From positions 162,304 through 226,303 of the IMG/VR virus record IMGVR_UViG_3300042319_002138: a stretch of DNA of 64,000 bases. The stretch is one strand, 5' to 3'. A program made the position numbers and the translations under genes. Shown piece by piece: positions 17,505 through 49,913 of the stretch (position 1 is the first letter of the stretch; every line of letters starts with the position of its first letter). The notes beneath the pieces are model-generated. The model searched no databases. It was not told where the DNA came from and worked only from the letters and a program-made list of their open reading frames with translations.

Positions 17505-17554
17505 GTTTTTTTAATAGTAGATTTAATATATAATAAAAATAAAATATTGTTAAA

Positions 17555-20016: not shown

Positions 20017-20020
20017 AATA

Positions 20021-20178: not shown

Positions 20179-20189
20179 AATTATTAAAA

Positions 20190-20600: not shown

Positions 20601-20825
20601 TTGGAAATGACTAGAATAGAAGAGATATTTTTTGAGGCTTTTGAATTGGGTATTCAAAATAAAATGTACGACACAGTATCTAAAATGGTTGGTAGTGGCG
20701 ATTATAAATACGTGGAACTCCGCCAAATTTATGAAATTGCTTTTGAAAAAGAAAAAAAGGTTTTAATTAATAATAATTTATATGAACAAACAAACAGTTC
20801 AGAAGTTTATCAACCGAGAGCTTAA
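20601..20825 (+). CDS. Hypothetical protein
   Basis: ORF. Confidence 0.5.
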   Translation: MEMTRIEEIFFEAFELGIQNKMYDTVSKMVGSGDYKYVELRQIYEIAFEKEKKVLINNNLYEQTNSSEVYQPRA

Positions 20826-21513: not shown

Positions 21514-21514
21514 A

Positions 21515-23229: not shown

Positions 23230-23466
23230 ATGGAACCAAAAAAACTTTTAAAAATACATAGTTTTTTATATGGTATAAATGAAATCTTAGGATATAAGGG
23301 TAATACTATTATAGAGACTGATTATATCTACGCACCATATTTACCTATGTTTATAGAAGAAGATTTTAGACCTAGGCAAGGGATTGCTTCAAGGTATGCA
23401 CGAAAAATCGTGAATAACAATTTTTATGGGAGAGTTACACTTGGAGCCGATACGCAAAATACCTAA
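23230..23466 (+). CDS. Short protein matching the C-terminal segment of a T4 gp23-like major capsid protein
   Basis: 'YIYAPYLPM...FRPRQGIASRYA...FYGRV'. Confidence 0.7.
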   Translation: MEPKKLLKIHSFLYGINEILGYKGNTIIETDYIYAPYLPMFIEEDFRPRQGIASRYARKIVNNNFYGRVTLGADTQNT

Positions 23467-23851
23467 ATTTAATTTTGACAATTCAATAAATTTTAATTTT
23501 AATTCTTACACTGTTAATGCGGGTGCAAGAACAATACGTGCAACATGGTCACCCGAATTAGCACAAGATTTACAAGCATACCACGGGATAGACGCTGAGG
23601 CTGAATTAACGAGGTTATTATCTGAGGAATGGGCTAGAAGTATTGATAGAGAAATTATTAATACTCTTCTTGCTCAAGATTTAATAACCGTACAACCATT
23701 AGGCCGACCAATCGGTCATCTTTTTTATTTCGATTCCCAATACGAAACATTCGAACCTAAAGTTTATGACGATGGTTCTTGGAGTCTAAAAAATATTTTT
23801 GAAAGTTCCATTGGTTTTAAAATAGAAATATCCCCACATAAGTTTATTTAA
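23426..23851 (+). CDS. Short protein matching middle then N-terminal segments of a gp23-like capsid protein
   Basis: 'VNAGARTIRATWSPELAQDLQAYHGIDAEAELTRLLSEE...IDREII' followed by 'LITVQPLGRPIGHLFYFD'. Confidence 0.75.
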   Translation: MGELHLEPIRKIPKFNFDNSINFNFNSYTVNAGARTIRATWSPELAQDLQAYHGIDAEAELTRLLSEEWARSIDREIINTLLAQDLITVQPLGRPIGHLFYFDSQYETFEPKVYDDGSWSLKNIFESSIGFKIEISPHKFI

Positions 23852-26921: not shown

Positions 26922-27002
26922 GGGAACTGAAAGTCGTTTGGATACGGCAGCGAAACTGTAAATTTCGTCCTCGCGGGAGTGGTTCGAGTCCACCAGGTCC
27001 CA
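26922..27002 (+). tRNA. tRNA-Tyr(GUA), atypical D arm
   Basis: Loop CTGTAAA, T arm GGTTCGAGTCC, acceptor GGGAACT/AGGTCCC. Confidence 0.75.
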
Positions 27003-27070
27003 CAAAAAAAAATAAATGTAATATAAGTGGATTTTAACTCTGTTTGTTATATTTATAATAAAAGAATATT

Positions 27071-28354: not shown

Positions 28355-30562
28355 TCATCGCATAATTGTTAAATGTCCTGTTATCATTTTACGTGAGTCA
28401 TCATACTCAGACCCATACATTATTCTCCAAACATAAATCCCATCAAAACACATTTTATTATTATAAGTACCATCCCAACCAACGGTATGATTGTATGATT
28501 CAAAAATTGTTTCACCCCATCTATTGAATACCAATAAATTATAATCATAGACATCAAACCCATCAGTAAATATTGGTAACCAAATATTGTTGAAAGCATC
28601 ACCATCGGGGGTAAATGTATTAGGTATATAAATTAATTCTTGTGGACATTCTTGTATTGCTATATTAGCTTGTTCTTCATTAGAAACACAACCATTAACC
28701 GTTTGGGAAACGCTAATTGTATAAAAACCAACATTATTCCAAACATAAGGTAAACTATTATCTTGTATTGTATCACCTTCAACAACCCAATCAAACAACC
28801 CAGATAAAGATGAATAAGCTGTATAGATTCTAAAAATACTATCACCTTCACAAAGTTGGTTAAATTCATATGAAGGTGTTACAGATGTTATGATTGGTTG
28901 TGGGTTTACAATAACGTTGATTGTTGTATCAAATGGGCAATTACTTTGTGTATATGTATAAGTTACATCATTGTTTGTTATGATACCTTGTTGTGGGCAA
29001 AATTCATCAGTCTGAACCCCATTGACTAAGAAAGTACCATTTAAAGGTGAACCCACTAAATCTACACAACCATCATAATCACAAAAAGGACCAATAGGGT
29101 CTATTGTAGGGTTTATGTTTAAAATAAATGTAGTGAAGTAAGAGGTATCACTATTACAACCAATAGGACTAGTAGAATAAACACTTATAGAGTCTTGATA
29201 TAAACCACTAGGTTCTAATGACCAATCCGTTGTTATATTATCAGTACCTTGACCATTTATTATTTGTGGTGTTGTAGACCATATGTAGTTGTAACCAACA
29301 CCCATAGAAGGTACACTATAACTTTCTGATGTTGATAAATAACATACCGTATCAGGACCACTAATAGGTGTCATTATTATTTGTGCTGGGTTAGTGAGTG
29401 TTGCATTACCTGTTACGGTACAACCTATACCGTCTGTAATTAAAAAACTATAATTACCATAACAAAGGTTAGTGGGGTTAAAAGTTGTTTGTAGAGTATT
29501 CCAAGAAATAGTAGTGACACCATTGGTTCCGTTAGGGATTACATTAATACTACCATCACAATAGTTATAACAAGTTGGGTCAATAAAAGTAATTGTAGGT
29601 TGTGGTAAGTTAGGTGGACCAGGTTGTACAAACACCGTATCAGGTCCTGGACCGGCAATACTATTACAAGTATTCCATCCAACATTACAAGAAGGATATA
29701 CTAGTTGACAAGTATAATTAGCTCCTTGTACAGGTGGTGTAACCGTAATGGACGCACCAACCCCAATTGGATTTGGGTTACCTACAATATACCATGTTGG
29801 TACAGGTAAAACAGTTGGTCCACTTGGAGTGTATCGGTACGCATCATTATTTGCTGTCCATTGTGTGGAATTCCTACCTGGTACAGTTATCGCCACGGTT
29901 CCTGTGGTATTATGTAATCCTTGAACCGCGGTACCTCCCGCCCAAGCTAGACAGTTTGGTTTTGATTGAATATAATTTTCTATTACGTTTGTTGATTCAT
30001 AAATCACTGTATGAAATGTCCCCAGTAAATTTGTACATGAAAACATAGGGACACCAACCCAACTAACAACTAATTTTCTACAAGGTGCTGTACCTTGAAC
30101 TTGGTACCTAATTTGCCCACCTAAACCTGGGTGCCAATCTTGCCAAGGACCCATGACACAATTTTTTGGTACTGTACCCGCACCATTAGGTATTGTTGCT
30201 GAAGTAAATGTTGTTGGTTGTGCCGGTGAAAAAGAAATCCAACCGTTAGAACCAACCCAAAATTGATTGTATGTTTGTCCAAAGAAACAAAATGTAAACC
30301 CAATATTAAAAGGACCTTGTTGTGAATCATCCGACATAAATAATTGTGTACCAGTATTTGTTTGTGTTACATAAGGAATATTTGTAACACCGTAGTTTGT
30401 TGTTTGATTTGGATTTGAACCTGGTCCACATTGACTAAAATCGGCAGTTAATGTTGTTGACCCAACACCACAAGGTAGTATTTGGTCTGGTCCTAAATAA
30501 GGACAGTATTGTGAATAGGTCACAAAAGAAATTAGTATAAAAAGGTATTTAATTAAGTTCAT
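28355..30562 (-). CDS. Secreted adhesin-like protein with T9SS type B (gliding motility-associated, CHU_C) C-terminal domain
   Basis: Signal peptide ending YSQ; C-terminal 'YIPNTFTPDGDAFN...VFNRWGE...GWDGTYN...GIYVW'. Confidence 0.88.
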   Translation of the reverse strand: MNLIKYLFILISFVTYSQYCPYLGPDQILPCGVGSTTLTADFSQCGPGSNPNQTTNYGVTNIPYVTQTNTGTQLFMSDDSQQGPFNIGFTFCFFGQTYNQFWVGSNGWISFSPAQPTTFTSATIPNGAGTVPKNCVMGPWQDWHPGLGGQIRYQVQGTAPCRKLVVSWVGVPMFSCTNLLGTFHTVIYESTNVIENYIQSKPNCLAWAGGTAVQGLHNTTGTVAITVPGRNSTQWTANNDAYRYTPSGPTVLPVPTWYIVGNPNPIGVGASITVTPPVQGANYTCQLVYPSCNVGWNTCNSIAGPGPDTVFVQPGPPNLPQPTITFIDPTCYNYCDGSINVIPNGTNGVTTISWNTLQTTFNPTNLCYGNYSFLITDGIGCTVTGNATLTNPAQIIMTPISGPDTVCYLSTSESYSVPSMGVGYNYIWSTTPQIINGQGTDNITTDWSLEPSGLYQDSISVYSTSPIGCNSDTSYFTTFILNINPTIDPIGPFCDYDGCVDLVGSPLNGTFLVNGVQTDEFCPQQGIITNNDVTYTYTQSNCPFDTTINVIVNPQPIITSVTPSYEFNQLCEGDSIFRIYTAYSSLSGLFDWVVEGDTIQDNSLPYVWNNVGFYTISVSQTVNGCVSNEEQANIAIQECPQELIYIPNTFTPDGDAFNNIWLPIFTDGFDVYDYNLLVFNRWGETIFESYNHTVGWDGTYNNKMCFDGIYVWRIMYGSEYDDSRKMITGHLTIMR

Positions 30563-31479: not shown

Positions 31480-33405
31480 ATGGATAAAAATTTTTACATT
31501 AATAAATTAAATAAAACTTTAATTTCACAAACACATAACCCTCTTTTTTATAAAGGGGATATAGTAGAAGGTTCTAAAATTCTAACTAAAGAAGTTGTAG
31601 ACTCAATTAATGTTGATAGATGTTCTATATGGTTATACAACAAAAATAAAACATCTATTGTTTGCCAACAATTATATGTTAAATCTGAAAATATGTGGTA
31701 TGATGGTTTAGAAATCTTTGAAAAGGATTTTGGACCGTATTTCGAAGAATTAATAAAGAACCCAATAATAATAGCTAATGATGCTGAAAAACATCCAGCA
31801 ACATCTTGTTTTACTGATGGTTATTTAAAACCACTGGGTATTAAATCTATGTTAGATGTACCTATCATTTATTTTGGGGAAACTATTGGTGTTATATGTA
31901 TTGAAAGTTTTACATTACGTGAATGGGATTCTTTTGAGGTTGATTTTACTCAATTATTATCTTCTTTATACACTTTTGCTTATTCAATAAAAGAAACAAA
32001 CAATTTAAATAAAAAAATAGAAGAAACAGAAAAATTTATTGACGTATCGACAATTATATCTACTGCTGATAAAAGAGGTAAAATTACATATGTTAATAAA
32101 AAATTTGAGGATGTTTCTGGGTGGTCTTTGGATGAGGTAGTTGGTAAAGACCATGTTATTGTTAATTCGGGATTACAACCTGATGGATATTGGGGTAAAA
32201 TGTATGAAACGGTAATGAAAGGTGATGTATGGAATGACGTTGTTACCAATAAAGGAAAATCAGGAGAATTATATTACGTTGATACTTTTATTAGAGCAAT
32301 TTTTGATACCGATGGTAAATTGGATGGATTTGCTTCAATAAGACAAGATGTTACAGAACTTAAAAAAAAGGAAGTTGAAATTCGCAATAGAATGAACGCG
32401 ATAAATAAATCTAACGCAGTTATTGAGTTTGATTTAGAAGGAAACATCATTTTTGCTAATAATTTGTTTTTAGAAACTATGGGATATTCTTTACAGGATG
32501 AAGTAGTTGGAAAACACCATAGAATTTTTATAGATGAGGAATACTCAAAAAGTGAAGAATACTCTCTTTTTTGGGAAAAATTAAATGAAGGGGTGTTATT
32601 TACCGGTGAAATTACTAGAATTAAAAAAGACGGTTCTTTAGTGTATCTACAAGCAACATACAATCCAGTTATCGGTTTAGATGGTAAGGTTTATCGTGTT
32701 ATGAAAATCGCGACAGATATCACCAATTCCTACGAACAAAAGAAAGAAATTGAAAAGAAAAACACTTACCTAGAACATGCGGCTAAAATATTAAGACACG
32801 ATATGCATTCAGGTATTAATACTTATATGCCAAGAGGATTAAGTTCTTTAGAAAGAAGATTAACCCCCGAAGATATTAAAACTTTAAAAATTGAGGCCCC
32901 AATTAAAATGATTAAAGAGGGTTTAAAACATTCCCAAAAAGTATATAAAGGGGTTTACGAATTTACAAATCTTGTAAAGAAAGATGTTGTTTTAAATAAA
33001 ACGGAATGTAATTTAAAAGATATACTTGAGGATTATTTATCAGCGACAGCATATAGTAGTCAAGTTATTATTGATGAGTTACCAACGATAGAAGTTAATG
33101 AACCATTATTCTGTACCGCAGTCGATAATTTAATTCGTAATGGGTTAAAGTATAATGATAGTAATACAAAATTTGTTAAAATATATATGGAAGATGGTAA
33201 TCTAATTATACAAGACAACGGTAGAGGGATTACACAAAAAGATTTTATTCATTTATCCCAACCATATACCAGAAAAGAAGGCCAAAAAGAATCTGGAACT
33301 GGTCTAGGGCTTAATATATGTGTAGCTATTTTAGAAGAACATAAATTTAATATTTCGTGTGAGAAAAATGACATAGGGACAAAAATGAAAATTGAACTAA
33401 AATGA
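31480..33405 (+). CDS. Cytoplasmic sensor histidine kinase (GAF-PAS-PAS-HisKA-HATPase)
   Basis: GAF 'MLDVPII..GVICIE'; two PAS/PAC; H box 'RHDMHSG'; N box 'DNLIRNGLKY'; 'DNGRG'; 'GTGLGL'. Confidence 0.93.
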   Translation: MDKNFYINKLNKTLISQTHNPLFYKGDIVEGSKILTKEVVDSINVDRCSIWLYNKNKTSIVCQQLYVKSENMWYDGLEIFEKDFGPYFEELIKNPIIIANDAEKHPATSCFTDGYLKPLGIKSMLDVPIIYFGETIGVICIESFTLREWDSFEVDFTQLLSSLYTFAYSIKETNNLNKKIEETEKFIDVSTIISTADKRGKITYVNKKFEDVSGWSLDEVVGKDHVIVNSGLQPDGYWGKMYETVMKGDVWNDVVTNKGKSGELYYVDTFIRAIFDTDGKLDGFASIRQDVTELKKKEVEIRNRMNAINKSNAVIEFDLEGNIIFANNLFLETMGYSLQDEVVGKHHRIFIDEEYSKSEEYSLFWEKLNEGVLFTGEITRIKKDGSLVYLQATYNPVIGLDGKVYRVMKIATDITNSYEQKKEIEKKNTYLEHAAKILRHDMHSGINTYMPRGLSSLERRLTPEDIKTLKIEAPIKMIKEGLKHSQKVYKGVYEFTNLVKKDVVLNKTECNLKDILEDYLSATAYSSQVIIDELPTIEVNEPLFCTAVDNLIRNGLKYNDSNTKFVKIYMEDGNLIIQDNGRGITQKDFIHLSQPYTRKEGQKESGTGLGLNICVAILEEHKFNISCEKNDIGTKMKIELK

Positions 33406-34016
33406 TAAAACTAAAAAATTTATTAACCATATTTTTCATAAGTATGGTAAGTATAGTGTATTCACAACCAACCTACCCTATCCAGACACAATTAAAAGGT
33501 GATTCTGTGGTTATTCTTACAAAAAAACAATCTGATGATATTAATTCACTAATTGAGAATCAAAAAATTAGAATACAAAAATATAAAACAGAAATAAAAT
33601 TAGTTAATGATACTAACACGTTATTAAATAACGATATTAAAATAAAAGATAGTGTTATTAACCAATTGGATAGTTTGTTAACCGTCCAAAACAATTATTA
33701 CGATAGTTTAATTTCTAAAATAGATACGTTAGAGAATTGGATTTTATCGTCGTCGATAGATAATGGGTACCTATATTATTCTTGGCAAGACTCAACAGTT
33801 AAAGTTATTGATTTAAGTTTGTATATGTTAGTATCGCATAGAGGAAGTGGTAATTATAGTTTAATTACAAGAGGTGATGTTACTAATATATATTATTGGA
33901 AACAAATAAATCTACTTAAAGAAGAAAGTCCTGAGATTGGTTGGGAATTAAATATATCCCCAAAATATAAACCAAGAATAGTATTATTCCCATATAAATT
34001 AACCCCAAAATTATGA
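33402..34016 (+). CDS. Secreted coiled-coil protein in two-component locus
   Basis: Signal peptide ending YSQ. Confidence 0.6.
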   Translation: MIKLKNLLTIFFISMVSIVYSQPTYPIQTQLKGDSVVILTKKQSDDINSLIENQKIRIQKYKTEIKLVNDTNTLLNNDIKIKDSVINQLDSLLTVQNNYYDSLISKIDTLENWILSSSIDNGYLYYSWQDSTVKVIDLSLYMLVSHRGSGNYSLITRGDVTNIYYWKQINLLKEESPEIGWELNISPKYKPRIVLFPYKLTPKL

Positions 34017-35416
34017 TAAAAAATATTTTAATAACAATAATGTTTTTGGGTTTTTTTACTTCTTTAAATGTAAATTCACAGACTGATAATAACCCCAAAA
34101 AAACAGAGATTGAACCTACATGTCCTAGTGATAGTCGTATAACTAGTTTAATTAAAAAATTAAATTACGAACCAAATAAAAAATTAACTAAATACCAATC
34201 AAGCTTATGTCAAGAAATTGGTATCTCTTTTTATAATAAAGGTATGTATGATGAGTCAGATTGGTATTTAGATAAGGTTAGTACCTATATTGATGTTGTT
34301 GATTTAAAACCTGAAAAAGTTTTTGACACACCTAAAGAAGAACCCGTACAAGAGTTAAGTGACTCAGAATTATCTAGTATTAAAGCCGACCAAAAATTTT
34401 TAGATGACCTACCAAAATCATACGATAATTTATCTAAAAAAGATATAAAAAAAATTGCTGATGAGATAGAGTCAAAACTCCAAAAACTATTAAAAGAAAA
34501 AAAAGAATTATTAAAAAATAAAGCTAGTCAAGAAGTTATCAGTTCTAAAACAAGTACTATACAAATATTAGGTAAAGAAAAAAATATCATTAATCTTAGT
34601 GTTAAAAATGATGATTTAGTTACCGATAAAAAAACCTTAAAAAAATATTTATGGTGGTCCACAATTGTTCTTTCTGTTTTGGTTTTAGGTATTATTGTTT
34701 TATTACAAAGAAAAACAATTAAAGTCCAAGACATAGAAATCGAAAACCAATTAAAAGACATTAACAAGAAAAACACTTACCTTGAATATGCGGCTAGAAT
34801 AATTAGACACGACATGCATTCAGGTATTAACACCTATATACCAAGAGGGTTATCGTCATTAGAAAAAAGAATTTCAATTGAGGAAATGAATAACTTAAAA
34901 ATTACACCCTCAATTAAAATGATAAAAGATGGTTTGGCACACACACAAAAAGTATATAAAAGTGTTTATGAGTTTACAAACCTTGTGAAAAATACTGTAG
35001 TTTTAGATAGAAATATGGTTGATATAAAAGAATCTTTATTAAAATACTTAACAAATACATCATATAAAAATCAGGTAGAAATTAGTGAATTAGTTACACT
35101 AAATGTAAATGAAACTCTTTTTTGGAACGCTATTGATAATTTAATTAAAAATGGGTTAAAATATAATAGTAGTGAAAATAAAGAAATTAAAATTTACATG
35201 GATAATAATGATTTAATTATTGAAGATAATGGTGTTGGATTTTCACAAAAAGAGTTCGAAAGAACAACAGGTGAATATTTAAATAAAAAGAGTAATTCCG
35301 AAGTTGGTTTAGGTTTAGGTATAACCAAAACAATTTTAGAAGAACATGGTTTTAGTATGATGTGTGAAAAAATTAACACTGGTACAAAAATAACGGTTAA
35401 ATTAAATAAAAATTAA
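34013..35416 (+). CDS. Membrane sensor histidine kinase
   Basis: Signal peptide, periplasmic domain, one TM, H box 'RHDMHSG', 'DNLIKNGLKY', 'DNGVG', 'GLGLG'. Confidence 0.9.
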   Translation: MIKNILITIMFLGFFTSLNVNSQTDNNPKKTEIEPTCPSDSRITSLIKKLNYEPNKKLTKYQSSLCQEIGISFYNKGMYDESDWYLDKVSTYIDVVDLKPEKVFDTPKEEPVQELSDSELSSIKADQKFLDDLPKSYDNLSKKDIKKIADEIESKLQKLLKEKKELLKNKASQEVISSKTSTIQILGKEKNIINLSVKNDDLVTDKKTLKKYLWWSTIVLSVLVLGIIVLLQRKTIKVQDIEIENQLKDINKKNTYLEYAARIIRHDMHSGINTYIPRGLSSLEKRISIEEMNNLKITPSIKMIKDGLAHTQKVYKSVYEFTNLVKNTVVLDRNMVDIKESLLKYLTNTSYKNQVEISELVTLNVNETLFWNAIDNLIKNGLKYNSSENKEIKIYMDNNDLIIEDNGVGFSQKEFERTTGEYLNKKSNSEVGLGLGITKTILEEHGFSMMCEKINTGTKITVKLNKN

Positions 35417-35423
35417 AAAAAAA

Positions 35424-35861
35424 ATGATTGATTCTATATTATTAGTTGATGACGAGGATTTATTCCATTTAGTATTTGAGGATGCGTGTTCCTTATTAGA
35501 TATAAGTTTGTCTTTAAACGCGTTAAACAGTTCTGACGAAGCAGCAAAACTATTCCAAAAATGGTTCCAAAGTGGTAATGAAGACAATAAACCAGAATGT
35601 GTTTTTGTTGACTTAAATATTATTGGTAGTTCTTTTGATGGTATTGAGTTAATTAGAAAAATAAACTTTGAATATGGTAACCATGTGGTTATTGGTATAA
35701 TTTCATCGTCTAATGAACCAGATGAACAAGCTAAAGCATTACAAGCTGGAGCACAGTTTTGGATTATTAAATCAGACGATATAGAACCAAGACTAGAAGA
35801 ATTTAGAAAAGATTACGAAGGTTATAAAAATAGAACCGCACCATTTAAAGTTTACAAATGA
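35424..35861 (+). CDS. Stand-alone response regulator (receiver domain)
   Basis: 'ILLVDD', phosphoacceptor 'FVDLN', 'ISSS', 'WIIKS'. Confidence 0.92.
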   Translation: MIDSILLVDDEDLFHLVFEDACSLLDISLSLNALNSSDEAAKLFQKWFQSGNEDNKPECVFVDLNIIGSSFDGIELIRKINFEYGNHVVIGIISSSNEPDEQAKALQAGAQFWIIKSDDIEPRLEEFRKDYEGYKNRTAPFKVYK

Positions 35862-36541: not shown

Positions 36542-36572
36542 TTTGACAATTAATAAACTTTTACTATATTTG
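36542..36572 (+). promoter_or_regulatory. Bacteroidota-type promoter for leader 2 / tRNA cluster 2
   Basis: TTTGACA and TATATTTG; flanking sequence closely resembles the leader-1 promoter. Confidence 0.75.
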
Positions 36573-36799: not shown

Positions 36800-36889
36800 G
36801 GAAGGGTGGCAGAGTTGGTCTATTGCATCTGATTTGAAATCAGAAGTACCTTTGAAAGGGTACCGTGGGTTCGAATCCTACCTCTTCCT
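36800..36889 (+). tRNA. tRNA-Ser(UGA)
   Basis: Loop TTTGAAA, long variable arm. Confidence 0.93.
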
Positions 36890-36896
36890 CATAAAT

Positions 36897-36968
36897 GGTC
36901 CATTGGTGTAGTGGCCAACATACATCCCTGTCACGGATGTGCCGCGAGTTCGATTCTCGCATGGACCG
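36897..36968 (+). tRNA. tRNA-Asp(GUC)
   Basis: Loop CTGTCAC. Confidence 0.92.
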
Positions 36969-37009
36969 CAACTAACCATAAATCCTAGTAACCCCTAGGT
37001 TGGTTAAAC

Positions 37010-37082
37010 AGTTCCTTAGCTCAGCTGGGAGAGCAACTCGCTTACATCGAGAAGGTCACAGGTTCGAACCCTGTAGGAACTA
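37010..37082 (+). tRNA. tRNA-Val(UAC)
   Basis: Loop CTTACAT. Confidence 0.92.
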
Positions 37083-37091
37083 CAATAAATT

Positions 37092-37166
37092 GCCTCATTA
37101 GCTCAGCTGGCTTAGAGCGTCTGATTTGTACTCAGAAGGCCGTGGGTTCGATTCCTACATGAGGCT
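37092..37166 (+). tRNA. tRNA-Thr(UGU)
   Basis: Loop TTTGTAC. Confidence 0.92.
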
Positions 37167-37228
37167 CAATTAATAACAAACAAATAAAAACGTCAGATTA
37201 TGGAAAGTGGCAAGTATGGCAAACACAA

Positions 37229-37300
37229 TCCCTCGTAGCAAACAAGTGTAGGCAACGGACTTTTAATCCGTGGGGCTGGGAGCGTTACCCGGCGGGGGAA
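37229..37300 (+). tRNA. tRNA-Lys(UUU), non-canonical T loop
   Basis: ACGGA-CTTTTAA-TCCGT; T arm CTGGG-AGCGTTA-CCCGG; 7-bp acceptor. Confidence 0.75.
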
Positions 37301-37308
37301 CAAAACAC

Positions 37309-37378
37309 ACCGAGGCTTAGTGGTAAAGAACTATCTCTCATAAGGATGGTCAAGTGGGTTCAATTCCCATACTCGGTA
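37309..37378 (+). tRNA. tRNA with CAU anticodon (Met or Ile2), short D arm
   Basis: Loop CTCATAA; T arm GTGGG-TTCAATT-CCCAT. Confidence 0.7.
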
Positions 37379-37386
37379 CATTATAT

Positions 37387-37457
37387 TGCGGCAAGGTGTA
37401 ATTGGTTGCATGGGAGTCTCATAAACTTCAGGGGTGGTTCGAGTCCACAGCACGCTA
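37387..37457 (+). tRNA. tRNA with CAU anticodon, imperfect acceptor stem
   Basis: GGAGT-CTCATAA-ACTTC; bulged acceptor. Confidence 0.6.
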
Positions 37458-37462
37458 CTAAT

Positions 37463-37537
37463 GGGGATATAGTTTAATTGGCTAAAACATCTGATTTGCA
37501 TTCAGAAGATGTCTCGGTTCGATTCCGAGTATCTCCA
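37463..37537 (+). tRNA. tRNA-Ala(UGC)
   Basis: Loop TTTGCAT; G3-U70. Confidence 0.92.
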
Positions 37538-37570
37538 CAATAAAATAACAAAAGAAAAAGAAAGAAATTA

Positions 37571-37690
37571 ATGAAGATAGTGTTAACAGGTAAATTAGAA
37601 TCACATAGAGAAATTTTTAGAGGAGAAAGAGAAAAAAATAAATTGATTAAAAGAATAAAAAAATTTATTTTTAAAAGAAAAAACGCTTAA
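37571..37690 (+). CDS. Small basic ORF inside tRNA cluster 2 (39 aa)
   Basis: ATG 37571 to TAA 37690; not in the ORF track. Confidence 0.35.
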   Translation: MKIVLTGKLESHREIFRGEREKNKLIKRIKKFIFKRKNA

Positions 37691-37734
37691 TAGAACAAAG
37701 TACAAGTTCAGGGTGGGGTGCGGTTCCCACAAAT

Positions 37735-37811
37735 GCGGGTGTAGCTCAATTGACTAGAGTACTAGCCTTCCAAGCTGGGAGTTGCGGGTTTGAATCCCGC
37801 CACCCGCTCCA
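37735..37811 (+). tRNA. tRNA-Gly(UCC)
   Basis: Loop CTTCCAA; CCA. Confidence 0.92.
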
Positions 37812-37812
37812 T

Positions 37813-37895
37813 ACGTCAGTGGCGGAATTGGTAGACGCGTTGGTTTTAGGAACCAATATCGTTAAGATGTGGGGGTTCGACTCCCCCCTGACGTA
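37813..37895 (+). tRNA. tRNA-Leu(UAG)
   Basis: Loop TTTAGGA, long variable arm. Confidence 0.93.
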
Positions 37896-37938
37896 CTTTT
37901 ATTTTGCCAATTAAACAATAACCCTTATATTTGTAATT

Positions 37939-38634
37939 ATGAAAAAATTAACCTTTATTAGTGACACACACACCAAACACGAGAAACTTAACGGTTTTCT
38001 TCCTGGTGGTGATATGTTAATCTGTGCTGGTGATATCACTAGTAGAGGTTATAAAACTGAAATTGAAAATTTTCTTAAGTGGTTTGATAAAATTGATAAC
38101 TATGACCACAAAATTTTCATAGCAGGTAATCACGACTTTGGTTTCCAAGACCAACCTAATGAAACTAAAGGTTTGTTAACTGGTTATAAAACAGTTGAAT
38201 ATTTACAAGACGAACTTTTATTGGTTGGTGATGAGGATTATGACGATATGGTTAAAGTTTGGGGTACTCCTTGGCAACCTGAATTTCATAATTGGGCATT
38301 TAACTTACCAAGAGGACAAGCTTTAAAAGAGAAGTGGGATATGATAACAGTTGGTACTGACATTCTTATCACTCACGGACCACCATTTGGCAAATTGGAT
38401 TACGTAAAATACCCAAATCAAAATGTTGGTTGTGAAGAACTAATGAAACGAGTTGAAGTAATCAAACCAAAAATTCACGTATTTGGACACATCCACGAAG
38501 GTTATGGTTATGTGTTTGATGGAAATACTCACTACATTAACGCAGCTGTGTTAAATGGACGATATGAGTTCCGCAATAAACCTGTGAATGTTTTATGGGA
38601 TAAAAACACAAATCATTTGGAATTTGTTGATTAA
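37939..38634 (+). CDS. Calcineurin-like metallophosphoesterase
   Basis: 'SDTH', 'AGD', 'AGNHD', 'THGPP', 'FGHIH'. Confidence 0.92.
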   Translation: MKKLTFISDTHTKHEKLNGFLPGGDMLICAGDITSRGYKTEIENFLKWFDKIDNYDHKIFIAGNHDFGFQDQPNETKGLLTGYKTVEYLQDELLLVGDEDYDDMVKVWGTPWQPEFHNWAFNLPRGQALKEKWDMITVGTDILITHGPPFGKLDYVKYPNQNVGCEELMKRVEVIKPKIHVFGHIHEGYGYVFDGNTHYINAAVLNGRYEFRNKPVNVLWDKNTNHLEFVD

Positions 38635-38651
38635 TAGGTTATCTTTGTGGT

Positions 38652-39113
38652 ATGAATAAAGTAAAAATATATTTGGATGACATAAGAACTCCTAATGACA
38701 AAGATTGGTTGGTTGTTAGGAGTTTTTATGAATTTGTAGACTTAATAAATAAAGTTGGTTTGAATAACATCGAATTAATTTCATTAGACCATGACTTGGG
38801 TGATACTGCTATGAATGAGTATTATAACAATGTTTCACCTAACTACAAATTAGATTATGAGAACATAGAAGAAAAAACTGGTTACGACGCGGTTAAATGG
38901 TTAGTTAATTTGTTTTATTCTTTGAATGAACATAGAATCAACATGAGTAGGTCTGAGAAAAAAAGGGATAAAAATTTTTATTTCCCTAAAGTTGTGGTTC
39001 ATTCAGCTAACCCAATAGGTTCAGCTAATATCATGGGTTATATCAATAACTTTTTAATGAATGAAGGTAAATCACAAGATTGTATAAGAGTTAAAATTGA
39101 GTATTATGTATGA
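38652..39113 (+). CDS. Cyclic-phosphate processing receiver-like domain protein
   Basis: 'IYLDDIRTP', 'ISLDHDLG', 'TGYD', 'VHSANPIG'. Confidence 0.8.
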   Translation: MNKVKIYLDDIRTPNDKDWLVVRSFYEFVDLINKVGLNNIELISLDHDLGDTAMNEYYNNVSPNYKLDYENIEEKTGYDAVKWLVNLFYSLNEHRINMSRSEKKRDKNFYFPKVVVHSANPIGSANIMGYINNFLMNEGKSQDCIRVKIEYYV

Positions 39114-39233
39114 TACTGAGGGACCAGAATTAACAAAACAACAAAAAAAAGATATTAAAAAAGTTGTTGACCGTTATCTTAGAATTAGATTCAAGAGAAG
39201 GGTTAGATTATTAATAGGATTAAAATTAAAATA

Positions 39234-39623
39234 ATGAAAGTTTCATTTGATTTTGATGGTACGCTTTCTCTTAAGAGTGTCCAAGAATACGCCAAAGATT
39301 TGGTGAGTAGGGGTTTAGATGTCCACATTGTTACTAGTAGACATAGTGATAAAGCAGCCAAAGAAGCTGGTTGGTGGTGGATATTGGACCAAAATAAAAA
39401 TCTATTTAATGTTGCTCAAGAATGTGGTATTGATGAAAAAAATATTACCTTCACAAACGGAAGGGACAAGATAGAATATTTGAAAGGTAAAGACTTCAAA
39501 TTTCATTTGGACGATGACGAAATTGAATTAATGTTAATTTTTGAATCTGATGAAAAGTGTATGCCTTTGAACGTTGGTCATAGTGATTGGCGTGATAATT
39601 GTGAAACAGAAATTAAAAGTTAA
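39234..39623 (+). CDS. HAD-superfamily phosphatase
   Basis: 'SFDFDGTL', 'VTSR', 'K...HLDDD'. Confidence 0.8.
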   Translation: MKVSFDFDGTLSLKSVQEYAKDLVSRGLDVHIVTSRHSDKAAKEAGWWWILDQNKNLFNVAQECGIDEKNITFTNGRDKIEYLKGKDFKFHLDDDEIELMLIFESDEKCMPLNVGHSDWRDNCETEIKS

Positions 39624-39624
39624 T

Positions 39625-40200
39625 ATGAAAGTAATTTTTCTTGATAATGATGGTGTAATCTGTTTGGCAGATAATTGGGGTAGTAGAATGAAAAAATTTA
39701 AAAAATATCATTCTAAAAATCCTGATGTTAAATTTGATGATAGACCAATTGATTGTAGATTAGATAACTTTGATGTGAAAGCAATTAAAGTTTTAAATAC
39801 CATCCTTGAACAAACAGGAGCTGAGATTGTGGTATCTTCTGATTGGAGATACCAAGCTTCTCTTGAGGAACTTGGGGACTACTATCAAAGTCAAGGAATT
39901 ATCAAAAGACCTATTGGGGTTACTGACATGTTTAAAGATATCTACCCAAGAGAATGGCAAAGATTGAGAAACTACGCCAAACTTGAGTATGAGAGACAAG
40001 CAGAAATCAAACATTGGTTATCGCAACATCCTGAAGTAACTCATTGGGTTGCAGTTGATGATTTAGATATGTCAGAAAAGTTTGGGTCAATCTCTGGTAA
40101 TCCTAATAGTGGGTTAACTAACTTTGTCCTAACACCAAAATCAACACAGGGAATTAAACAATCAGGGATTAAAGAAAAAATCTTAAAATTTTTAATGTAA
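39625..40200 (+). CDS. HAD domain protein (RNA-repair Swiss-army-knife type)
   Basis: 'IFLDNDGV', 'IVVSSDWR', 'WVAVDD'. Confidence 0.8.
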   Translation: MKVIFLDNDGVICLADNWGSRMKKFKKYHSKNPDVKFDDRPIDCRLDNFDVKAIKVLNTILEQTGAEIVVSSDWRYQASLEELGDYYQSQGIIKRPIGVTDMFKDIYPREWQRLRNYAKLEYERQAEIKHWLSQHPEVTHWVAVDDLDMSEKFGSISGNPNSGLTNFVLTPKSTQGIKQSGIKEKILKFLM

Positions 40201-40201
40201 T

Positions 40202-40489
40202 ATGGCTAGATTAAGTAGAGAAGAAAAAATGAACAAAGCTGTTGTCGACATTATTAATGAAATGTTTAAGATAGCAGGTCATGAGGTAACTTATGACGAT
40301 ATCAAGGACCGTAAGGATAATTGGTACGCCCAATGGACCATGACTGAAGCTCAATACGACGAATGGAAAAAATGGGGTAAAAAATATCTCCAAAAGAACC
40401 TTCGTATGTATGCAAAACAAGCAGAAAAAGAAATGTTATGGGTAGGTATGATGTGGGGATTAAAATTTTCTGACCTACAACTTGGTTAA
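40202..40489 (+). CDS. Hypothetical protein
   Basis: ORF. Confidence 0.6.
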   Translation: MARLSREEKMNKAVVDIINEMFKIAGHEVTYDDIKDRKDNWYAQWTMTEAQYDEWKKWGKKYLQKNLRMYAKQAEKEMLWVGMMWGLKFSDLQLG

Positions 40490-40542: not shown

Positions 40543-41163
40543 ATGAGTAGAAATATTAATAGAAGTACTTCAGCTATTGTTGATGAAATTCTTAGAAAGA
40601 GTAGAATTCGTGAACAAGAAGAGGAAGAAGAAAACAAAGATACTGAAGAAAAGAAAACTGAAACAAAAGGTGAACCTGAACTTTATAAATTAAGTAGTAA
40701 GGTTATAGAAATTCTTAATAATAGAATTAAAGATGAGTATACAGCTCATTACTATTATAGAGCGGCTACTAACTGGTGTCAGGATATGAATTATAAGAAA
40801 GCTGCTGAGTTCTTTAAAAATGAGGCTGACGATGAGTTAGAACACGCTCAAAAACTACAAGAGTATATGACAGGTTTTAATATTTTACCTGAAATAGAAA
40901 AAACAGAAACAAAACACACTTTTGGTAATTTACTTGATGTTGTTTATGGAGCTTACACTATGGAGTTGGCTTTAATGAAAGATTATAATAAAGATTCTCA
41001 GGATGTTTTTTCTGATGATATCACAACATTTGATTTTTTAACTGAATTTAGAGAAATCCAAAAAGGAGCTGTAATTGAATACAATGATTTGATTAACGCA
41101 TCCAATTTGATTGATAAAGGGGATAAATTCCAAATACTTTATTTTGAACAAACTTATTTTTAA
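40543..41163 (+). CDS. Ferritin-like protein with N-terminal extension
   Basis: 'LNNRIKDEYTAHYYY', 'EADDELEHAQK', 'EIQKGAVIE'. Confidence 0.82.
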   Translation: MSRNINRSTSAIVDEILRKSRIREQEEEEENKDTEEKKTETKGEPELYKLSSKVIEILNNRIKDEYTAHYYYRAATNWCQDMNYKKAAEFFKNEADDELEHAQKLQEYMTGFNILPEIEKTETKHTFGNLLDVVYGAYTMELALMKDYNKDSQDVFSDDITTFDFLTEFREIQKGAVIEYNDLINASNLIDKGDKFQILYFEQTYF

Positions 41164-41258
41164 GTAATTGTATCATCGAATAAGGACCCCTTTCAGAAAT
41201 GTTAGGGGTTTTTTGTTTTTATATTGTTTAATTAAAAAAATAACTATATATTTGTGTT

Positions 41259-41450
41259 ATGGAATATTTTAAATTGTTTTTAATGTGGTTAGCATTTATT
41301 GTTATCACAACTTATTACGGGGATTACCTTGTAAGTAGAGAAGTAAACGGGTTCATCCAACTTTTAGGTTTCGTTGGAATGGTTGCACTCGTAGGATTAG
41401 TAGGAAACGAAACCATCAAAGTTTTAAATAATAAAAAAGAAGAAAAATGA
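41259..41450 (+). CDS. Small two-TM protein
   Basis: Hydrophobic helices; TATATTTG promoter. Confidence 0.6.
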   Translation: MEYFKLFLMWLAFIVITTYYGDYLVSREVNGFIQLLGFVGMVALVGLVGNETIKVLNNKKEEK

Positions 41451-42397
41451 TTAGTACAGTAATTTTTGTAGTATGTTTAATTGCGGTTATCCTTACCGTT
41501 CTAAAAACAAGAGGTAGTATGTTTACGGTAACCCAAAACCATTACGGTCATGATAGTAAACGATTCAACCCATCTTGGCTCATTAAACCGATTGGTATTT
41601 TTGTTGTAGGTATCGTTATTTCAATGACCCAACCGTTTGCGATTGAAAAAGTTGACGCAGGTCACAAAGGATTAAAGATTAATTTGGTCGGAGACCAACG
41701 AGGTGTATCAAGTTATCAGTATAAAACTGGTTGGGTACTTTATAACACTTGGACAGAACAAGTATTGGAGTTTCCAACATACCAACAACACATTGAGTAT
41801 GAAGACCAAGGTGTAATCCTTAAAGGTGGATTCTCAGCAACCATTAAACCAACATTTAACTATTCTCTACGTGAGGATGCTATTGGTGATATGTTTGTTA
41901 ATTTAAGATTATCTATTAGTGAAATTGAAAAGGGTTGGTTGAAAAACGCTATTATTGGGGCAGTAAATGACGTAGCTAACACATGGGAGGTAGATAGTAT
42001 TTTTAATCACCGACAAGCATTTGAATCAGCAATTGTTGCAGAATGTAATGTTAGGTTATCTAAATGGTTTAACGTATCTCAGTTGAGAACTAATATCACA
42101 CCACCTGAGGCATTACAAGAGTCAATTATCGCTAAAACAAAGGCTATCCAACAAGCTGAAGCCTCTGAACAACAAGCTATCGCAGCAATCTCTGAAGGAA
42201 GACGTAAAGTAGCCGTAGCAAGAGCGGATTCTGCTGAAACTATAATCAACGCAAATGCGTCAGCACTTTCAATTAAGATTAAACAAACTCAATTAACACC
42301 TATGTATATTGAGTACTTAAAGGCGTCTGCTTGGGATGGAAAATTACCAACAACGGTAGCAGGTGGTTCAGGATTGTTTTTAAACCTAAACAAATAA
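41447..42397 (+). CDS. SPFH/band-7 (prohibitin-like) membrane protein
   Basis: TM anchor, 'VDAGHKG', 'NITPPEALQESIIAK', 'WDGKLP'. Confidence 0.88.
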   Translation: MISTVIFVVCLIAVILTVLKTRGSMFTVTQNHYGHDSKRFNPSWLIKPIGIFVVGIVISMTQPFAIEKVDAGHKGLKINLVGDQRGVSSYQYKTGWVLYNTWTEQVLEFPTYQQHIEYEDQGVILKGGFSATIKPTFNYSLREDAIGDMFVNLRLSISEIEKGWLKNAIIGAVNDVANTWEVDSIFNHRQAFESAIVAECNVRLSKWFNVSQLRTNITPPEALQESIIAKTKAIQQAEASEQQAIAAISEGRRKVAVARADSAETIINANASALSIKIKQTQLTPMYIEYLKASAWDGKLPTTVAGGSGLFLNLNK

Positions 42398-45177: not shown

Positions 45178-45283
45178 AGTCAGGTGGCGGAATTGGTTAG
45201 ACGCTAAATTAACGAGTGGATAGTGTGCCATTGGGGAAGGGCCAAGAAAGTTACACATACAGGTTCAAGTCCTGTCCTGACTA
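45178..45283 (+). ncRNA. tRNA-like RNA (Leu-type D arm, T arm, acceptor AGTCAGG/CCTGACT) lacking a canonical anticodon arm
   Basis: TGGCGGAATTGGTTAGACGC ... ACAGGTTCAAGTCCTGT; the middle does not form a 5-bp stem with 7-nt loop. Confidence 0.7.
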
Positions 45284-45554: not shown

Positions 45555-45635
45555 AGTCAGGTGGCGAAATGGTGACGCCTAAATGAGACCCGTGGGGCGA
45601 AAAGACTCTCGTAGGTTCAAATCCTGTCCTGACTA
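45555..45635 (+). ncRNA. Second tRNA-like RNA with identical acceptor AGTCAGG/CCTGACT and no anticodon arm
   Basis: TGGCGAAATGGTGACGC ... GTAGGTTCAAATCCTGT. Confidence 0.7.
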
Positions 45636-49804: not shown

Positions 49805-49913
49805 ACACAAGTGGTGAAATTGGTAAACACGGGGTGTAACAACTCTGACCGAAAATAATCTACCTTCGGGTCGATAAAAGTAGGTTTTGGAGGTTCGAAT
49901 CCTTCTTTGTGTA
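49805..49913 (+). ncRNA. tRNA-like RNA with aberrant anticodon arm and expanded variable region
   Basis: Acceptor ACACAAG/TTTGTGT, D arm TGGTGAAATTGGTAAACAC, T arm GGAGGTTCGAATCCTTC. Confidence 0.65.

What the first reader, a model, noticed from the sequence alone, without database searches (positions are those of the whole stretch)
37939..40200. RNA end-healing cluster directly behind tRNA cluster 2
A metallophosphoesterase, a cyclic-phosphate-processing receiver-like protein and two HAD phosphatases are adjacent. These families are tied to 2',3'-cyclic phosphate and 3'-phosphate healing, as in T4 Pnk repair of cleaved tRNA-Lys. Together with the Ro-like gene, tmRNA and the attenuators, they suggest a layered defence against host tRNA destruction. 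No RNA ligase is visible in this window.
Basis: partly seen in the sequence, partly recalled or inferred. Interest (0 to 1): 0.6.

Follow-up and report, generated by a model that had tools for sequence, protein, structure and literature searches.

The report
Ligase-less RNA end-healing gene cluster
A jumbo phage of a probable Bacteroidota host carries, right behind a tRNA gene cluster, four phosphoesterase genes of families predicted to clean up cyclic-phosphate RNA ends, but no kinase or RNA ligase was found in about 292 kb of its sequence, although its relatives keep both.

Summary
Window 37939-40200 holds four tightly packed, same-strand genes that start 42 nt after tRNA-Leu:
- an MPPED2-type metallophosphodiesterase;
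- a cREC (cyclic-phosphate-processing receiver) protein;
- a 129-aa HAD phosphatase of an unnamed viral family;
- a "Swiss-army-knife" HAD (HAD_SAK_2).

All catalytic motifs are intact. In 39 dereplicated related viral loci, cREC has a metallophosphoesterase within 5 kb in 26, an RNA ligase (Rnl1 or a PHA02142-OB type) in 17, tRNA genes in 19 and a small P-loop kinase in 9. The link to RNA repair is therefore real, but it was already predicted by Iyer, Burroughs and Aravind (2021, 2022).

What is particular here is a healing-only version. I found no Rnl1, Rnl2-type, RtcB, ATP-dependent ligase or polynucleotide kinase in about 292 kb of this phage (expected size roughly 300-320 kb). The positions where the closest collinear relative has Rnl1, and kinase plus a second phosphoesterase, lack those genes here. 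Two HAD genes follow cREC instead.

Biochemistry is inferred, and cREC has never been assayed. The verdict is a new variant of a computationally known kind, of moderate interest.

The parts
36800..37896 (+). tRNA cluster 2 (Ser, Asp, Val, Thr, Lys, Ala, Gly, Leu), which forms the upstream context. A Bacteroidota-type promoter motif lies at 36542-36572 just before it.
   Evidence: ARAGORN; Rfam; motif. Most of these tRNA genes lack an encoded CCA.
37903..37933 (+). Promoter-like motif TTTG-N19-TATATTTG, ending 6 nt before the MPE start codon.
   Evidence: 13 such motifs in the window against 2.9 expected, and 0 of 100 shuffles reach 13. That this is the Bacteroidota -33/-7 consensus is from my own knowledge, and function is inferred.
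37939..38634 (+). MPPED2-type (class III) binuclear metallophosphodiesterase, 231 aa, with all five motifs present (SDTH, GD, GNHD, THGPP, GHIHEG).
   Evidence: Pfam PF00149 2e-14; phrog_1649; 3rl4_A MPPED2 E 6.7e-48, aligned 5-216 to 63-286; sequence.
38616..38647 (+). Second promoter-like motif, ending 5 nt before the cREC start codon.
38652..39113 (+). cREC protein, 153 aa: receiver fold with a helical insert. Invariant residues are D9, D10, D46-H47-D48 and H117-S-A-N-P121.
   Evidence: Pfam PF20274 1.1e-20; alignment A2; AlphaFold pLDDT 95.5; all 50 best VIA-align hits are receiver domains, Z 7.3-9.1; no solved relative by sequence.
39234..39623 (+). HAD129: minimal capless HAD phosphatase, 129 aa, of an unnamed viral family with no Pfam model.
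   Evidence: 392 homologues; invariant D6, D8, T10, T34, R36, K79, D93-95, W47, W49, H91, C109 and C123; pLDDT 96.4; Foldseek hits AphA at 2.5e-4, T4 Pnkp phosphatase 5uj0, Pnkp1 4xru and HisB-N, TM about 0.5.
39625..40200 (+). HAD_SAK_2 ('Swiss Army Knife' RNA-repair HAD), 191 aa from the ATG at 39625. Invariant residues are D7, D9, G10, S71-S72 and D145-D146.
   Evidence: Pfam PF18143 2.3e-23; phrog_1818; homologue alignment.
40202..40489 (+). orf95: 95-aa ORF of unknown function that starts 1 nt after the HAD_SAK_2 stop. It may or may not belong to the unit.
   Evidence: No Pfam or PHROG hit; found only in the same phage among the fetched loci; no atlas hit.

Best explanation
This is a 3'-end 'healing-only' RNA-end (or 2',3'-cyclic nucleotide) processing module, derived from a complete heal-and-seal RNA-repair cassette.

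Proposed chemistry:
- The MPPED-type metallophosphodiesterase and the cREC protein open 2',3'-cyclic phosphates left by metal-independent ribonucleases on tRNA or other RNA. This gives 3'- or 2'-monophosphates.
- HAD_SAK_2, possibly helped by the small HAD129, then removes the monophosphate and leaves a 2',3'-diol end.

The genes have their own host-type promoter motifs, of the same kind that precedes the phage tRNA clusters and the tmRNA. They would therefore be expressed together with the phage's translation-maintenance genes.

Compared with its relatives, this lineage lacks the 5'-kinase, a second metallophosphoesterase and Rnl1, and has two HAD phosphatases after cREC. The healed ends are therefore not resealed by a phage ligase. 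They would instead go to a host enzyme that needs a 3'-OH, such as the CCA-adding enzyme or a 3'-5' exonuclease, or the module simply removes cyclic-phosphate species.

Shown: gene content, intact catalytic motifs, folds, family membership, neighbourhood statistics, and the lack of ligase and kinase at the syntenic slots and in about 292 kb.
Inferred: every substrate, the order of the steps, expression, and the fate of the healed ends.
For: Family and motif evidence. Folds.

MPPED-family enzymes are diesterases without monoesterase activity and prefer 2',3'-cAMP, giving 3'/2'-AMP (PMC10547211). That fits a ring-opening step followed by HAD monoesterases.

In relatives, cREC sits with Rnl1 (PF09511 1e-18), a PHA02142-OB/PF09414 ligase, an AAA_33 kinase, MPEs and HAD_SAK_2. 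Counts in 39 dereplicated full-flank loci: MPE 26, ligase 17, tRNA 19, kinase 9, HAD_SAK_2 6.

The cREC tree nests this phage in a clade where 16 of 22 members have a ligase adjacent.

Collinear relative G016 has the order tRNA-Gly, tRNA-Leu, kinase, MPE_b, MPE_w, cREC, and has Rnl1 next to the homologue of window ORF 22321-23226. In the window those slots hold nothing and two Mom-family genes respectively.

The MPE_w-cREC-HAD_SAK_2 trio recurs in L022. Promoter motif enrichment. Literature predictions for cREC, SAK-HAD and calcineurin-like genes in phage RNA repair: PMC7824862 and PMC9503650.
Against: - No protein here, and no cREC or HAD_SAK_2 protein anywhere, has been assayed according to the held literature.
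- Without kinase and ligase, the benefit of healing anticodon-loop breaks is unclear. Removing the 3'-phosphate would even block sealing by a host RtcB-type ligase (established RtcB chemistry, my own knowledge).
- About 10% of the genome is unseen, and all three complete relatives have a ligase, in one case 47 kb from cREC.
- HAD129 homologues lie in unrelated contexts elsewhere.
- MPPED enzymes also hydrolyse free 3',5'- and 2',3'-cNMPs, so small molecules are equally possible substrates.
- The direction of gene loss versus gain rests on a midpoint-rooted tree.
Confidence: 0.5

Rival explanations
1. The enzymes act on small molecules and not on RNA ends. They would degrade nucleotide or ADP-ribose-derived immune messengers or metabolites, such as 2',3'- or 3',5'-cNMPs, cyclic oligonucleotide products with cyclic-phosphate ends, or ADPr-1''-2''-cyclic phosphate and ADPr-phosphates. 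This would be counter-defence or NAD-related clean-up.
For: - MPPED-family enzymes hydrolyse free cAMP, cGMP and 2',3'-cAMP.
- cREC is also predicted to process ADPr cyclic phosphates.
- Ligase and kinase are absent here.
- A Tad6-like (Thoeris inhibitor) gene sits in relatives' cassettes.
- The genome has a Nudix (window 13219-13653) and a SIR2.
- Phage phosphatases that act on ADPR-1''-phosphate have precedent, although that enzyme is a Macro domain.
Against: - No Macro, KptA or NAPRTase/NAMPT gene was found.
- The SIR2 is 39 kb away, next to a sigma factor, and not in the cluster.
- Orthologous cREC and MPE genes are most often beside RNA ligases, kinases and tRNA genes.
- HAD_SAK_2 is defined by RNA-repair contexts (Pfam name).
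Confidence: 0.25
2. It is an ordinary complete heal-and-seal system. The ligase, and perhaps a kinase, lie in the roughly 10% of the genome not yet assembled, or are too divergent to detect, or are supplied by the host.
For: - The record is 70% complete by CheckV, and about 292 kb is known after adding two sibling contigs that do not close the circle.
- All three complete relatives carry a ligase, and it can be 10-47 kb from cREC.
Against: - Pfam models for Rnl1, Rnl2-type, RtcB and ATP-dependent ligases, and HMMs built from the relatives' own ligases and kinase, find nothing in the 292 kb. The best E is about 0.2-0.6 on frames of 40 aa or more, apart from one 0.016 on a 51-aa frame. A positive control worked.
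- Both syntenic slots lack these genes.
- The only AAA_33 hit is an APS kinase in a glycan cluster.
Confidence: 0.15
3. The four genes are not one functional unit. They would be general phosphatases or nucleotidases, for example for nucleotide salvage from degraded host RNA, that happen to be neighbours in a variable region.
For: - The exact four-gene array occurs only in this phage.
- HAD129 relatives sit in unrelated contexts.
- 10 of 39 relatives have cREC with none of the partner genes within 5 kb.
- AphA, the nearest fold of HAD129, is a nucleotide phosphatase.
Against: - MPE-cREC adjacency in 26 of 39 dereplicated loci is far above what a 10-kb span of a roughly 300-kb genome would give by chance.
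- The trio recurs in L022.
- The genes are tightly spaced (17-nt, 120-nt and 1-nt gaps) and on the same strand.
Confidence: 0.1

Closest known systems
cREC-centred phage RNA-repair / ADPr-processing neighbourhoods (Iyer, Anantharaman, Krishnan, Burroughs, Aravind 2021, PMC7824862; Iyer, Burroughs, Anantharaman, Aravind 2022, PMC9503650)
   Same: cREC together with a calcineurin-like phosphoesterase and a standalone 'Swiss-army-knife' HAD, in a tRNA-rich jumbo phage. No histidine kinase is fused or adjacent to cREC itself.
   Different: Those systems are described with an RNA ligase, a nucleotide kinase and often a sirtuin, 2H, Nudix or MazG gene. Here no ligase or kinase was found. The sirtuin and the Nudix are about 39 and 25 kb away in unrelated contexts. 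An extra unnamed HAD is present.
T4 Pnkp + Rnl1 tRNA-Lys repair pathway
   Same: A HAD-type 3'-phosphatase step. The T4 Pnkp phosphatase domain is among the nearest folds of HAD129. The genes are linked with tRNA genes, and relatives carry Rnl1.
   Different: No 5'-kinase domain and no Rnl1 in this phage. Ring opening is assigned to separate MPPED-type and cREC proteins and not to the HAD domain.
MPPED1/MPPED2/dMpped class III metallophosphodiesterases (PDB 3RL3-3RL5)
   Same: The phage MPE aligns over the whole catalytic domain at E 7e-48, including the GHIHEGYG motif, and all metal-binding motifs are conserved.
   Different: It lacks the N-terminal extension of about 60 residues found in the animal proteins. 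The context is phage RNA repair, and the activity is untested.
Bacterial Pnkp/Hen1 and Pnkp1-Rnl-Hen1 RNA repair complexes (e.g. Clostridium thermocellum Pnkp)
   Same: They use a binuclear metallophosphoesterase (CthPnkp, my own knowledge) or a HAD (Pnkp1, a fold hit) to heal >p and 3'-p ends.
   Different: Those are multidomain kinase-phosphatase-ligase proteins with the Hen1 methyltransferase. None of those parts was detected here. By my own knowledge the CthPnkp MPE is lambda-phosphatase-like and not MPPED-like.

Membership tests
cREC (PF20274, cyclic-phosphate processing receiver domain) | Sequence match to the family model above the curated cut-off | tested here: met
   74.6 bits against a cut-off of 27, E 1.1e-20.
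cREC (PF20274, cyclic-phosphate processing receiver domain) | Receiver (CheY-like) fold | tested here: met
   AlphaFold pLDDT 95.5. All 50 top VIA-align hits are receiver domains, Z 7.3-9.1, rmsd 2.0-3.8 A over 73-103 residues. Foldseek hits are weak but of the same family.
cREC (PF20274, cyclic-phosphate processing receiver domain) | Conserved aspartates of the receiver-type acidic pocket | tested here: met
   D9, D10, D46 and D48 are invariant in 35 sequences. Their equivalence to CheY D12/D13/D57 is inferred from strand position and was not superposed.
cREC (PF20274, cyclic-phosphate processing receiver domain) | Never part of a histidine kinase phosphorelay; found in RNA-repair or ADPr contexts | tested here: inconclusive
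   Its immediate neighbours are phosphoesterases, and relatives have ligases and kinases next to it. However, a histidine kinase-like gene and a canonical Response_reg gene lie 2.8-4.6 kb upstream, beyond the tRNA cluster. That arrangement is conserved in relatives.
cREC (PF20274, cyclic-phosphate processing receiver domain) | Hydrolysis of 2',3'-cyclic phosphate or ADPr cyclic phosphate | not testable with these tools
   This is a prediction only. The literature states the domain is experimentally uncharacterised, and nothing newer was found.
HAD_SAK_2 (PF18143) | Model match and HAD catalytic motifs I, II and IV | tested here: met
   83.5 bits against 27.5. D7, D9, G10, S71-S72 and D145-D146 are invariant among 7 homologues.
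HAD_SAK_2 (PF18143) | Standalone protein linked to RNA-repair genes | tested here: met
   A standalone 191-aa protein next to cREC and the MPE. It is found within 5 kb of cREC in 6 of 39 relatives, and in L076 it lies beside two ligases and a kinase.
MPPED / class III metallophosphodiesterase | Close sequence similarity over the catalytic domain and all five metallophosphoesterase motifs | tested here: met
   E 6.7e-48 to 3rl4_A over residues 5-216. Motifs were read.
MPPED / class III metallophosphodiesterase | Diesterase-only activity with a preference for 2',3'-cAMP | not testable with these tools
   Known for the rat and fly enzymes (PMC10547211) and not assayed for the phage protein.
HAD superfamily (for the 129-aa ORF) | DxDxT motif I, S/T motif II, K motif III, acidic motif IV, and a Rossmannoid HAD fold | tested here: met
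   Invariant D6, D8, T10, T34, K79 and D93-95. Fold hits are AphA, T4 Pnkp phosphatase and HisB-N, with probability 0.97-1.0 and TM about 0.5. No Pfam model matches.
Complete heal-and-seal RNA repair system (T4 Pnkp/Rnl1-like) | 5'-OH polynucleotide kinase | tested here: not met
   The only AAA_33 hit is an APS kinase-HAD fusion in a glycan cluster. The HMM of the relatives' kinase finds nothing in 292 kb. The slot next to the MPE is empty.
Complete heal-and-seal RNA repair system (T4 Pnkp/Rnl1-like) | RNA ligase (Rnl1, Rnl2-type or RtcB) | tested here: not met
   None found in G000, G001-G005 or G011, by Pfam models or by HMMs built from the relatives' ligases. PF09414 was not run on G011. 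The positive control worked. Caveat: about 10% of the genome is unseen.
Sirtuin-centred cREC RNA-repair neighbourhoods (Iyer et al. 2022) | Sirtuin gene in the same conserved neighbourhood as cREC | tested here: not met
   A SIR2 gene is present but lies 39 kb upstream, adjacent to a sigma-70 factor.

The most novel reading that the evidence does not exclude
Phages can run a ligase-independent RNA 3'-end healing pathway. A promoter-equipped MPPED-type diesterase / cREC / HAD set, co-regulated with phage tRNAs and the tmRNA, would convert cyclic-phosphate or 3'-phosphate tRNA ends to 3'-OH. The host CCA-adding enzyme or exonucleases could then restore or clear them, or host sensors of cyclic-phosphate RNA would stay silent. 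This lineage would have swapped kinase plus ligase for extra phosphatases. It would also provide the first tractable minimal system in which to assay the never-characterised cREC domain.
Probability: 0.2. Interest if true: 0.65.

Novelty: new variant of a known kind. Interest (0 to 1): 0.42.

Why it matters
cREC and the 'Swiss-army-knife' HADs are widespread in large phages, but they are known only from computational prediction. This locus offers a compact natural arrangement in which to test the predicted order of reactions: diesterase, cREC, then two HADs, with intact active sites and no fused or interfering kinase or ligase. Identifying the cassette's metallophosphoesterase as an MPPED-type enzyme gives a concrete first substrate to try, since assayed members of that family prefer 2',3'-cyclic nucleotides.

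If the ligase-less state is confirmed in a closed genome, it would show that end-healing has a selective value of its own in phage-host conflict. That would bear on how phages with large tRNA sets cope with host RNases. If a ligase turns up instead, this is one more ordinary member of a predicted family.

Tried and rejected
- Megablast of the locus against GenBank phages found no match.
- TROVE/Ro, KptA, Macro, NAPRTase, the CCA-adding enzyme (PolyA_pol), ATP-dependent DNA ligase and RtcB gave no hits.
- An AAA_33 hit looked like a Pnk candidate by size (322-aa frame). It is an APS kinase-HAD fusion among glycosyltransferases, so I rejected it.
- The SIR2 hit raised the sirtuin-centred model. 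I rejected it as a neighbour because it is 39 kb away, next to a sigma factor.
- A preprint on phage phosphatases countering RES defence turned out to concern a Macro-domain enzyme, so it serves only as context.
- Sequence and profile searches of the PDB gave nothing for cREC, HAD129, HAD_SAK_2 or the relatives' MPE_b.
- Closing the genome: sibling contigs added 29.6 kb upstream and 36.5 kb downstream, but the ends do not overlap.
- The sigma-70 promoter scan was uninformative, with fewer hits than in shuffles.
- The Burroughs and Aravind 2016 paper that defined the SAK HADs is not in the held library, so its criteria are taken second-hand from the 2021 and 2022 papers.
- The DUF2828-TROVE relationship could not be checked in the literature or by PDB sequence search.
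- orf95 gave no atlas hit.
- Not used: sequencing-run or read tools, complex prediction, and the large representative protein search.
Full report
**What is there**

The window is the last 64 kb of a 226,303-bp IMG/VR virus record that CheckV rates as about 70% complete. It has about 30% G+C, nearly all genes are on the + strand, and it carries 24 tRNA genes and a tmRNA. A type IX secretion (CHU_C) protein points to a Bacteroidota host. So does a strongly enriched TTTG-N18-20-TAnnTTTG motif: 13 sites against 2.9 expected, with none of 100 shuffles reaching 13. That this motif is the Bacteroidota promoter consensus is my own knowledge.

tRNA cluster 2 ends at 37896. Four co-directional ORFs follow, with gaps of 42, 17, 120 and 1 nt:
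- 37939-38634, 231 aa: Metallophos, 2e-14.
- 38652-39113, 153 aa: cREC_REC, 1.1e-20.
- 39234-39623, 129 aa: no Pfam hit.
- 39625-40200, 191 aa: HAD_SAK_2, 2.3e-23.

The ORF listing starts the last ORF at a TTG at 39574. All homologues begin MKVIFLD, so the start is the ATG at 39625. A 95-aa ORF of unknown function follows 1 nt later.

**The proteins**

The metallophosphoesterase is not a generic calcineurin-like hit. It aligns over its whole length with mammalian MPPED2 (3rl4_A, E 6.7e-48), including GHIHEGYG, and it keeps all five metal-binding motifs. Assayed MPPED-family enzymes are diesterases with no monoesterase activity. They prefer 2',3'-cAMP and produce 3'- and 2'-AMP (PMC10547211).

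cREC has no solved relative by sequence. Its model is confident (pLDDT 95.5). A Foldseek-independent search returns only receiver domains among the top 50 hits (Z 7.3-9.1). D9, D10, D46-H47-D48 and H117-S-A-N-P121 are invariant in 35 homologues.

The 129-aa ORF starts MKVSFDFDGT and belongs to a family of about 130-aa viral proteins with no Pfam model (392 hits). All HAD catalytic positions are invariant in that family, as are two Trp, one His and two Cys. It folds as a capless HAD (pLDDT 96.4). Its nearest solved folds are AphA, the T4 Pnkp 3'-phosphatase domain, Pnkp1 and HisB-N, but TM-scores are only about 0.5.

HAD_SAK_2 keeps D7, D9, G10, S71-S72 and D145-D146.

**Context in relatives**

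At least 156 IMG/VR contigs encode a cREC that is 57% or more identical, and I fetched 80. Five of them are the same phage. The exact four-gene array occurs only there.

I clustered all ORFs within 5 kb of cREC and sent representatives to Pfam. The recurrent neighbours are:
- three metallophosphoesterase clusters;
- an Rnl1-type ligase (PF09511, 1.1e-18);
- a PHA02142-OB plus PF09414 ligase;
- a 130-aa AAA_33 kinase;
- HAD_SAK_2;
- M23 peptidase, an MGS-like protein, DUF3307 and a Tad6-like protein.

Among the 39 dereplicated loci with full flanks, the counts are: MPE 26, ligase 17, tRNA genes 19, kinase 9, HAD_SAK_2 6, and none of these in 10.

Typical gene orders:
- MPE, cREC, kinase, u200, DUF3307, Rnl1, MPE.
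- cREC, MPE, Rnl(PHA02142), Rnl1.
- Rnl1, MPE, kinase, Rnl, HAD_SAK_2, HAD_SAK_2, cREC.

This reproduces the published computational prediction that cREC, SAK-HADs and calcineurin-like enzymes belong to phage RNA-repair or ADPr-processing systems. Those papers also state that cREC is experimentally uncharacterised (PMC7824862 and PMC9503650). I found nothing newer.

**The ligase question**

In the 226-kb record there is no RtcB, PF09414 or PF09511 ligase. HMMs built from the relatives' own ligases and kinase find nothing there either. The best E-values are 0.5-0.6 for the ligases and 1.6 for the kinase, while the cREC, MPE and HAD_SAK_2 HMMs recover their own genes at 1e-80 to 1e-125. The Rnl1 model works as a positive control in three relatives.

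Two near-identical sibling contigs extend the sequence. G005 adds 36.5 kb beyond the 3' end and G011 adds 29.6 kb before the 5' end. About 292 kb is therefore known. Complete relatives are 294-322 kb. Neither extension has a ligase or kinase, and no ATP-dependent ligase domain was found.

The only AAA_33 hit is an APS kinase-HAD fusion among glycosyltransferases.

All three complete relatives do have a ligase, which lies 10 kb, 47 kb or farther from cREC. Absence in an incomplete genome is therefore not proof on its own.

The stronger argument is synteny. The contig of the closest collinear relative (G016, cREC 80% identical) has the order tRNA-Gly, tRNA-Leu, kinase, MPE_b, MPE_w, cREC. It has Rnl1 immediately upstream of the homologue of window ORF 22321-23226. 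In the window, tRNA-Leu is followed after 42 nt by MPE_w, and the Rnl1 slot holds two Mom-family genes with no similarity to a ligase.

On a cREC tree, this phage falls in a supported four-member clade (99/90) with L039, L008 and L022. None of the four has a ligase within 5 kb. That clade is nested in a clade of 22 in which 16 do. L022 shares the MPE_w-cREC-HAD_SAK_2 trio. The most economical reading is loss or displacement of kinase and ligase, and gain of HADs, in this lineage. The tree is midpoint-rooted, so the direction is an inference.

**Other partners**

No KptA, Macro, NAPRTase, TROVE or CCA-adding enzyme was found. A SIR2 gene exists, but it is 39 kb upstream next to a sigma-70 factor. 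A Nudix gene is 25 kb upstream. Homologues of HAD129 on two other jumbo-phage contigs have no RNA-repair neighbours.

**Transcription**

The Bacteroidota-type promoter motif occurs 6 nt before the MPE start (37903-37933) and 5 nt before the cREC start (38616-38647). It also occurs before tRNA cluster 1 (26119), tRNA cluster 2 (36542) and the tmRNA (57945). This suggests, but does not show, that the cluster has its own promoters of the same class as the translation-maintenance RNAs. Most of the phage tRNA genes lack an encoded CCA.

**Interpretation**

The best-supported model (confidence 0.5) is a healing-only module for cyclic-phosphate and 3'-phosphate ends. The MPPED-type diesterase and cREC open the ring. 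HAD_SAK_2, perhaps with HAD129, removes the monophosphate. No phage enzyme reseals the break.

Which enzymes use the healed ends is open. Candidates are the host CCA-adding enzyme, exonucleases, or simple removal of cyclic-phosphate species. Dephosphorylation would work against a host RtcB, which needs the 3'-phosphate (my own knowledge).

The rivals are:
- small-molecule or ADPr-derivative processing as counter-defence (0.25);
- an ordinary complete system whose ligase lies in the unseen 10% (0.15);
- unrelated phosphatases that are neighbours by accident (0.1).

**Verdict**

The T4-like heal-and-seal picture is incomplete for this phage, and the 'Ro-like' element is unsupported by the TROVE model. 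The kind of system is already known from computational work. This is a new, reduced variant with a well-defined diesterase component, and it is of moderate interest mainly as an experimental entry point to cREC.

Noticed in passing
window 31480-35861: The phage carries a two-component signalling set: a GAF-PAS-PAS histidine kinase (31480-33405), a second HATPase_c protein (34013-35416) and a canonical Response_reg protein (35424-35861). The kinase-regulator-u225 block is conserved upstream of cREC in several relatives (L016, L021, L025, L039, L045).
   Followed up: partly
window 20782-22309: Two adjacent Mom-family (DNA modification) genes, at 1e-22 and 1e-54. They occupy the position where the collinear relative G016 has Rnl1.
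   Followed up: partly
The TROVE model does not hit anywhere in the genome, and there is no PDB relative by sequence.
   Followed up: partly
window 26119, 36542, 37903, 38616, 43441, 45747, 55246, 57945, 61843 (+ strand starts): The TTTG-N18-20-TAnnTTTG motif is enriched: 13 sites against 2.9 expected. Copies sit just upstream of tRNA clusters 1 and 2, the MPE, cREC and the tmRNA. They are likely host-type promoters and a hint of a Bacteroidota host.
   Followed up: partly
window 37309-37378, 45178-45283, 45555-45635, 49805-49913; also 37229-37301 and 26922-27003: Rfam gives four weak tRNA matches (30-35 bits) that ARAGORN does not call, two of them about 106-109 nt long. Conversely, ARAGORN's tRNA-Lys and tRNA-Tyr are missing from the Rfam list.
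   Followed up: no
window 13219-17968: A run of host-like housekeeping genes: Nudix (13219-13653), RNase HII (14070-14672), full-length DnaJ (15349-16281) and an FKBP prolyl isomerase (17555-17968).
   Followed up: no
window 40543-42397: A ferritin/rubrerythrin-like protein (40543-41163) and an SPFH/Band 7 membrane protein (41447-42397) lie directly downstream of the cluster. Relative G016 lacks this whole block after cREC.
   Followed up: no
window 28355-30562 (- strand): A 735-aa protein with a PKD-like domain and a CHU_C type IX secretion sorting signal, on the opposite strand to almost everything else.
   Followed up: no
window 23426-23851: A 141-aa ORF that matches only positions 132-195 of the T4 Gp23 major capsid model (4e-22). 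It may be a capsid fragment or a decoration-like paralogue.
   Followed up: no
genome G000:C1:160497-162037 (just before the window; L128:665-2205): A sigma-70 family factor (271 aa) is immediately followed by a SIR2 sirtuin (241 aa, 4.5e-37).
   Followed up: partly
genome G000:C1:66943-70171 (L001): An APS kinase fused to a HAD domain lies next to a cytidylyltransferase-like protein and a double glycosyltransferase. This looks like a sulfation or glycan-modification cluster in the phage.
   Followed up: no
L016:~11000-12400, L047:3603-4361 (relatives): A Tad6-like (type I Thoeris inhibitor family, 5e-16) gene lies inside or beside the cREC/Rnl1 cassette in 6 dereplicated relatives. This phage has none.
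   Followed up: partly
L008:4400-6450 (relative): Two cREC paralogues flank an MPE_w gene and a NUMOD3 homing-endonuclease-like gene, which suggests endonuclease-mediated remodelling of this locus.
   Followed up: no
G016 (L132/L133), reverse-complement coordinates 19993-20256 (= G016:C1:8168-8431): The 264-nt spacer between tRNA-Leu and the kinase gene in the relative contains a G+C-rich, apparently structured segment. It could be an unannotated small RNA.
   Followed up: no
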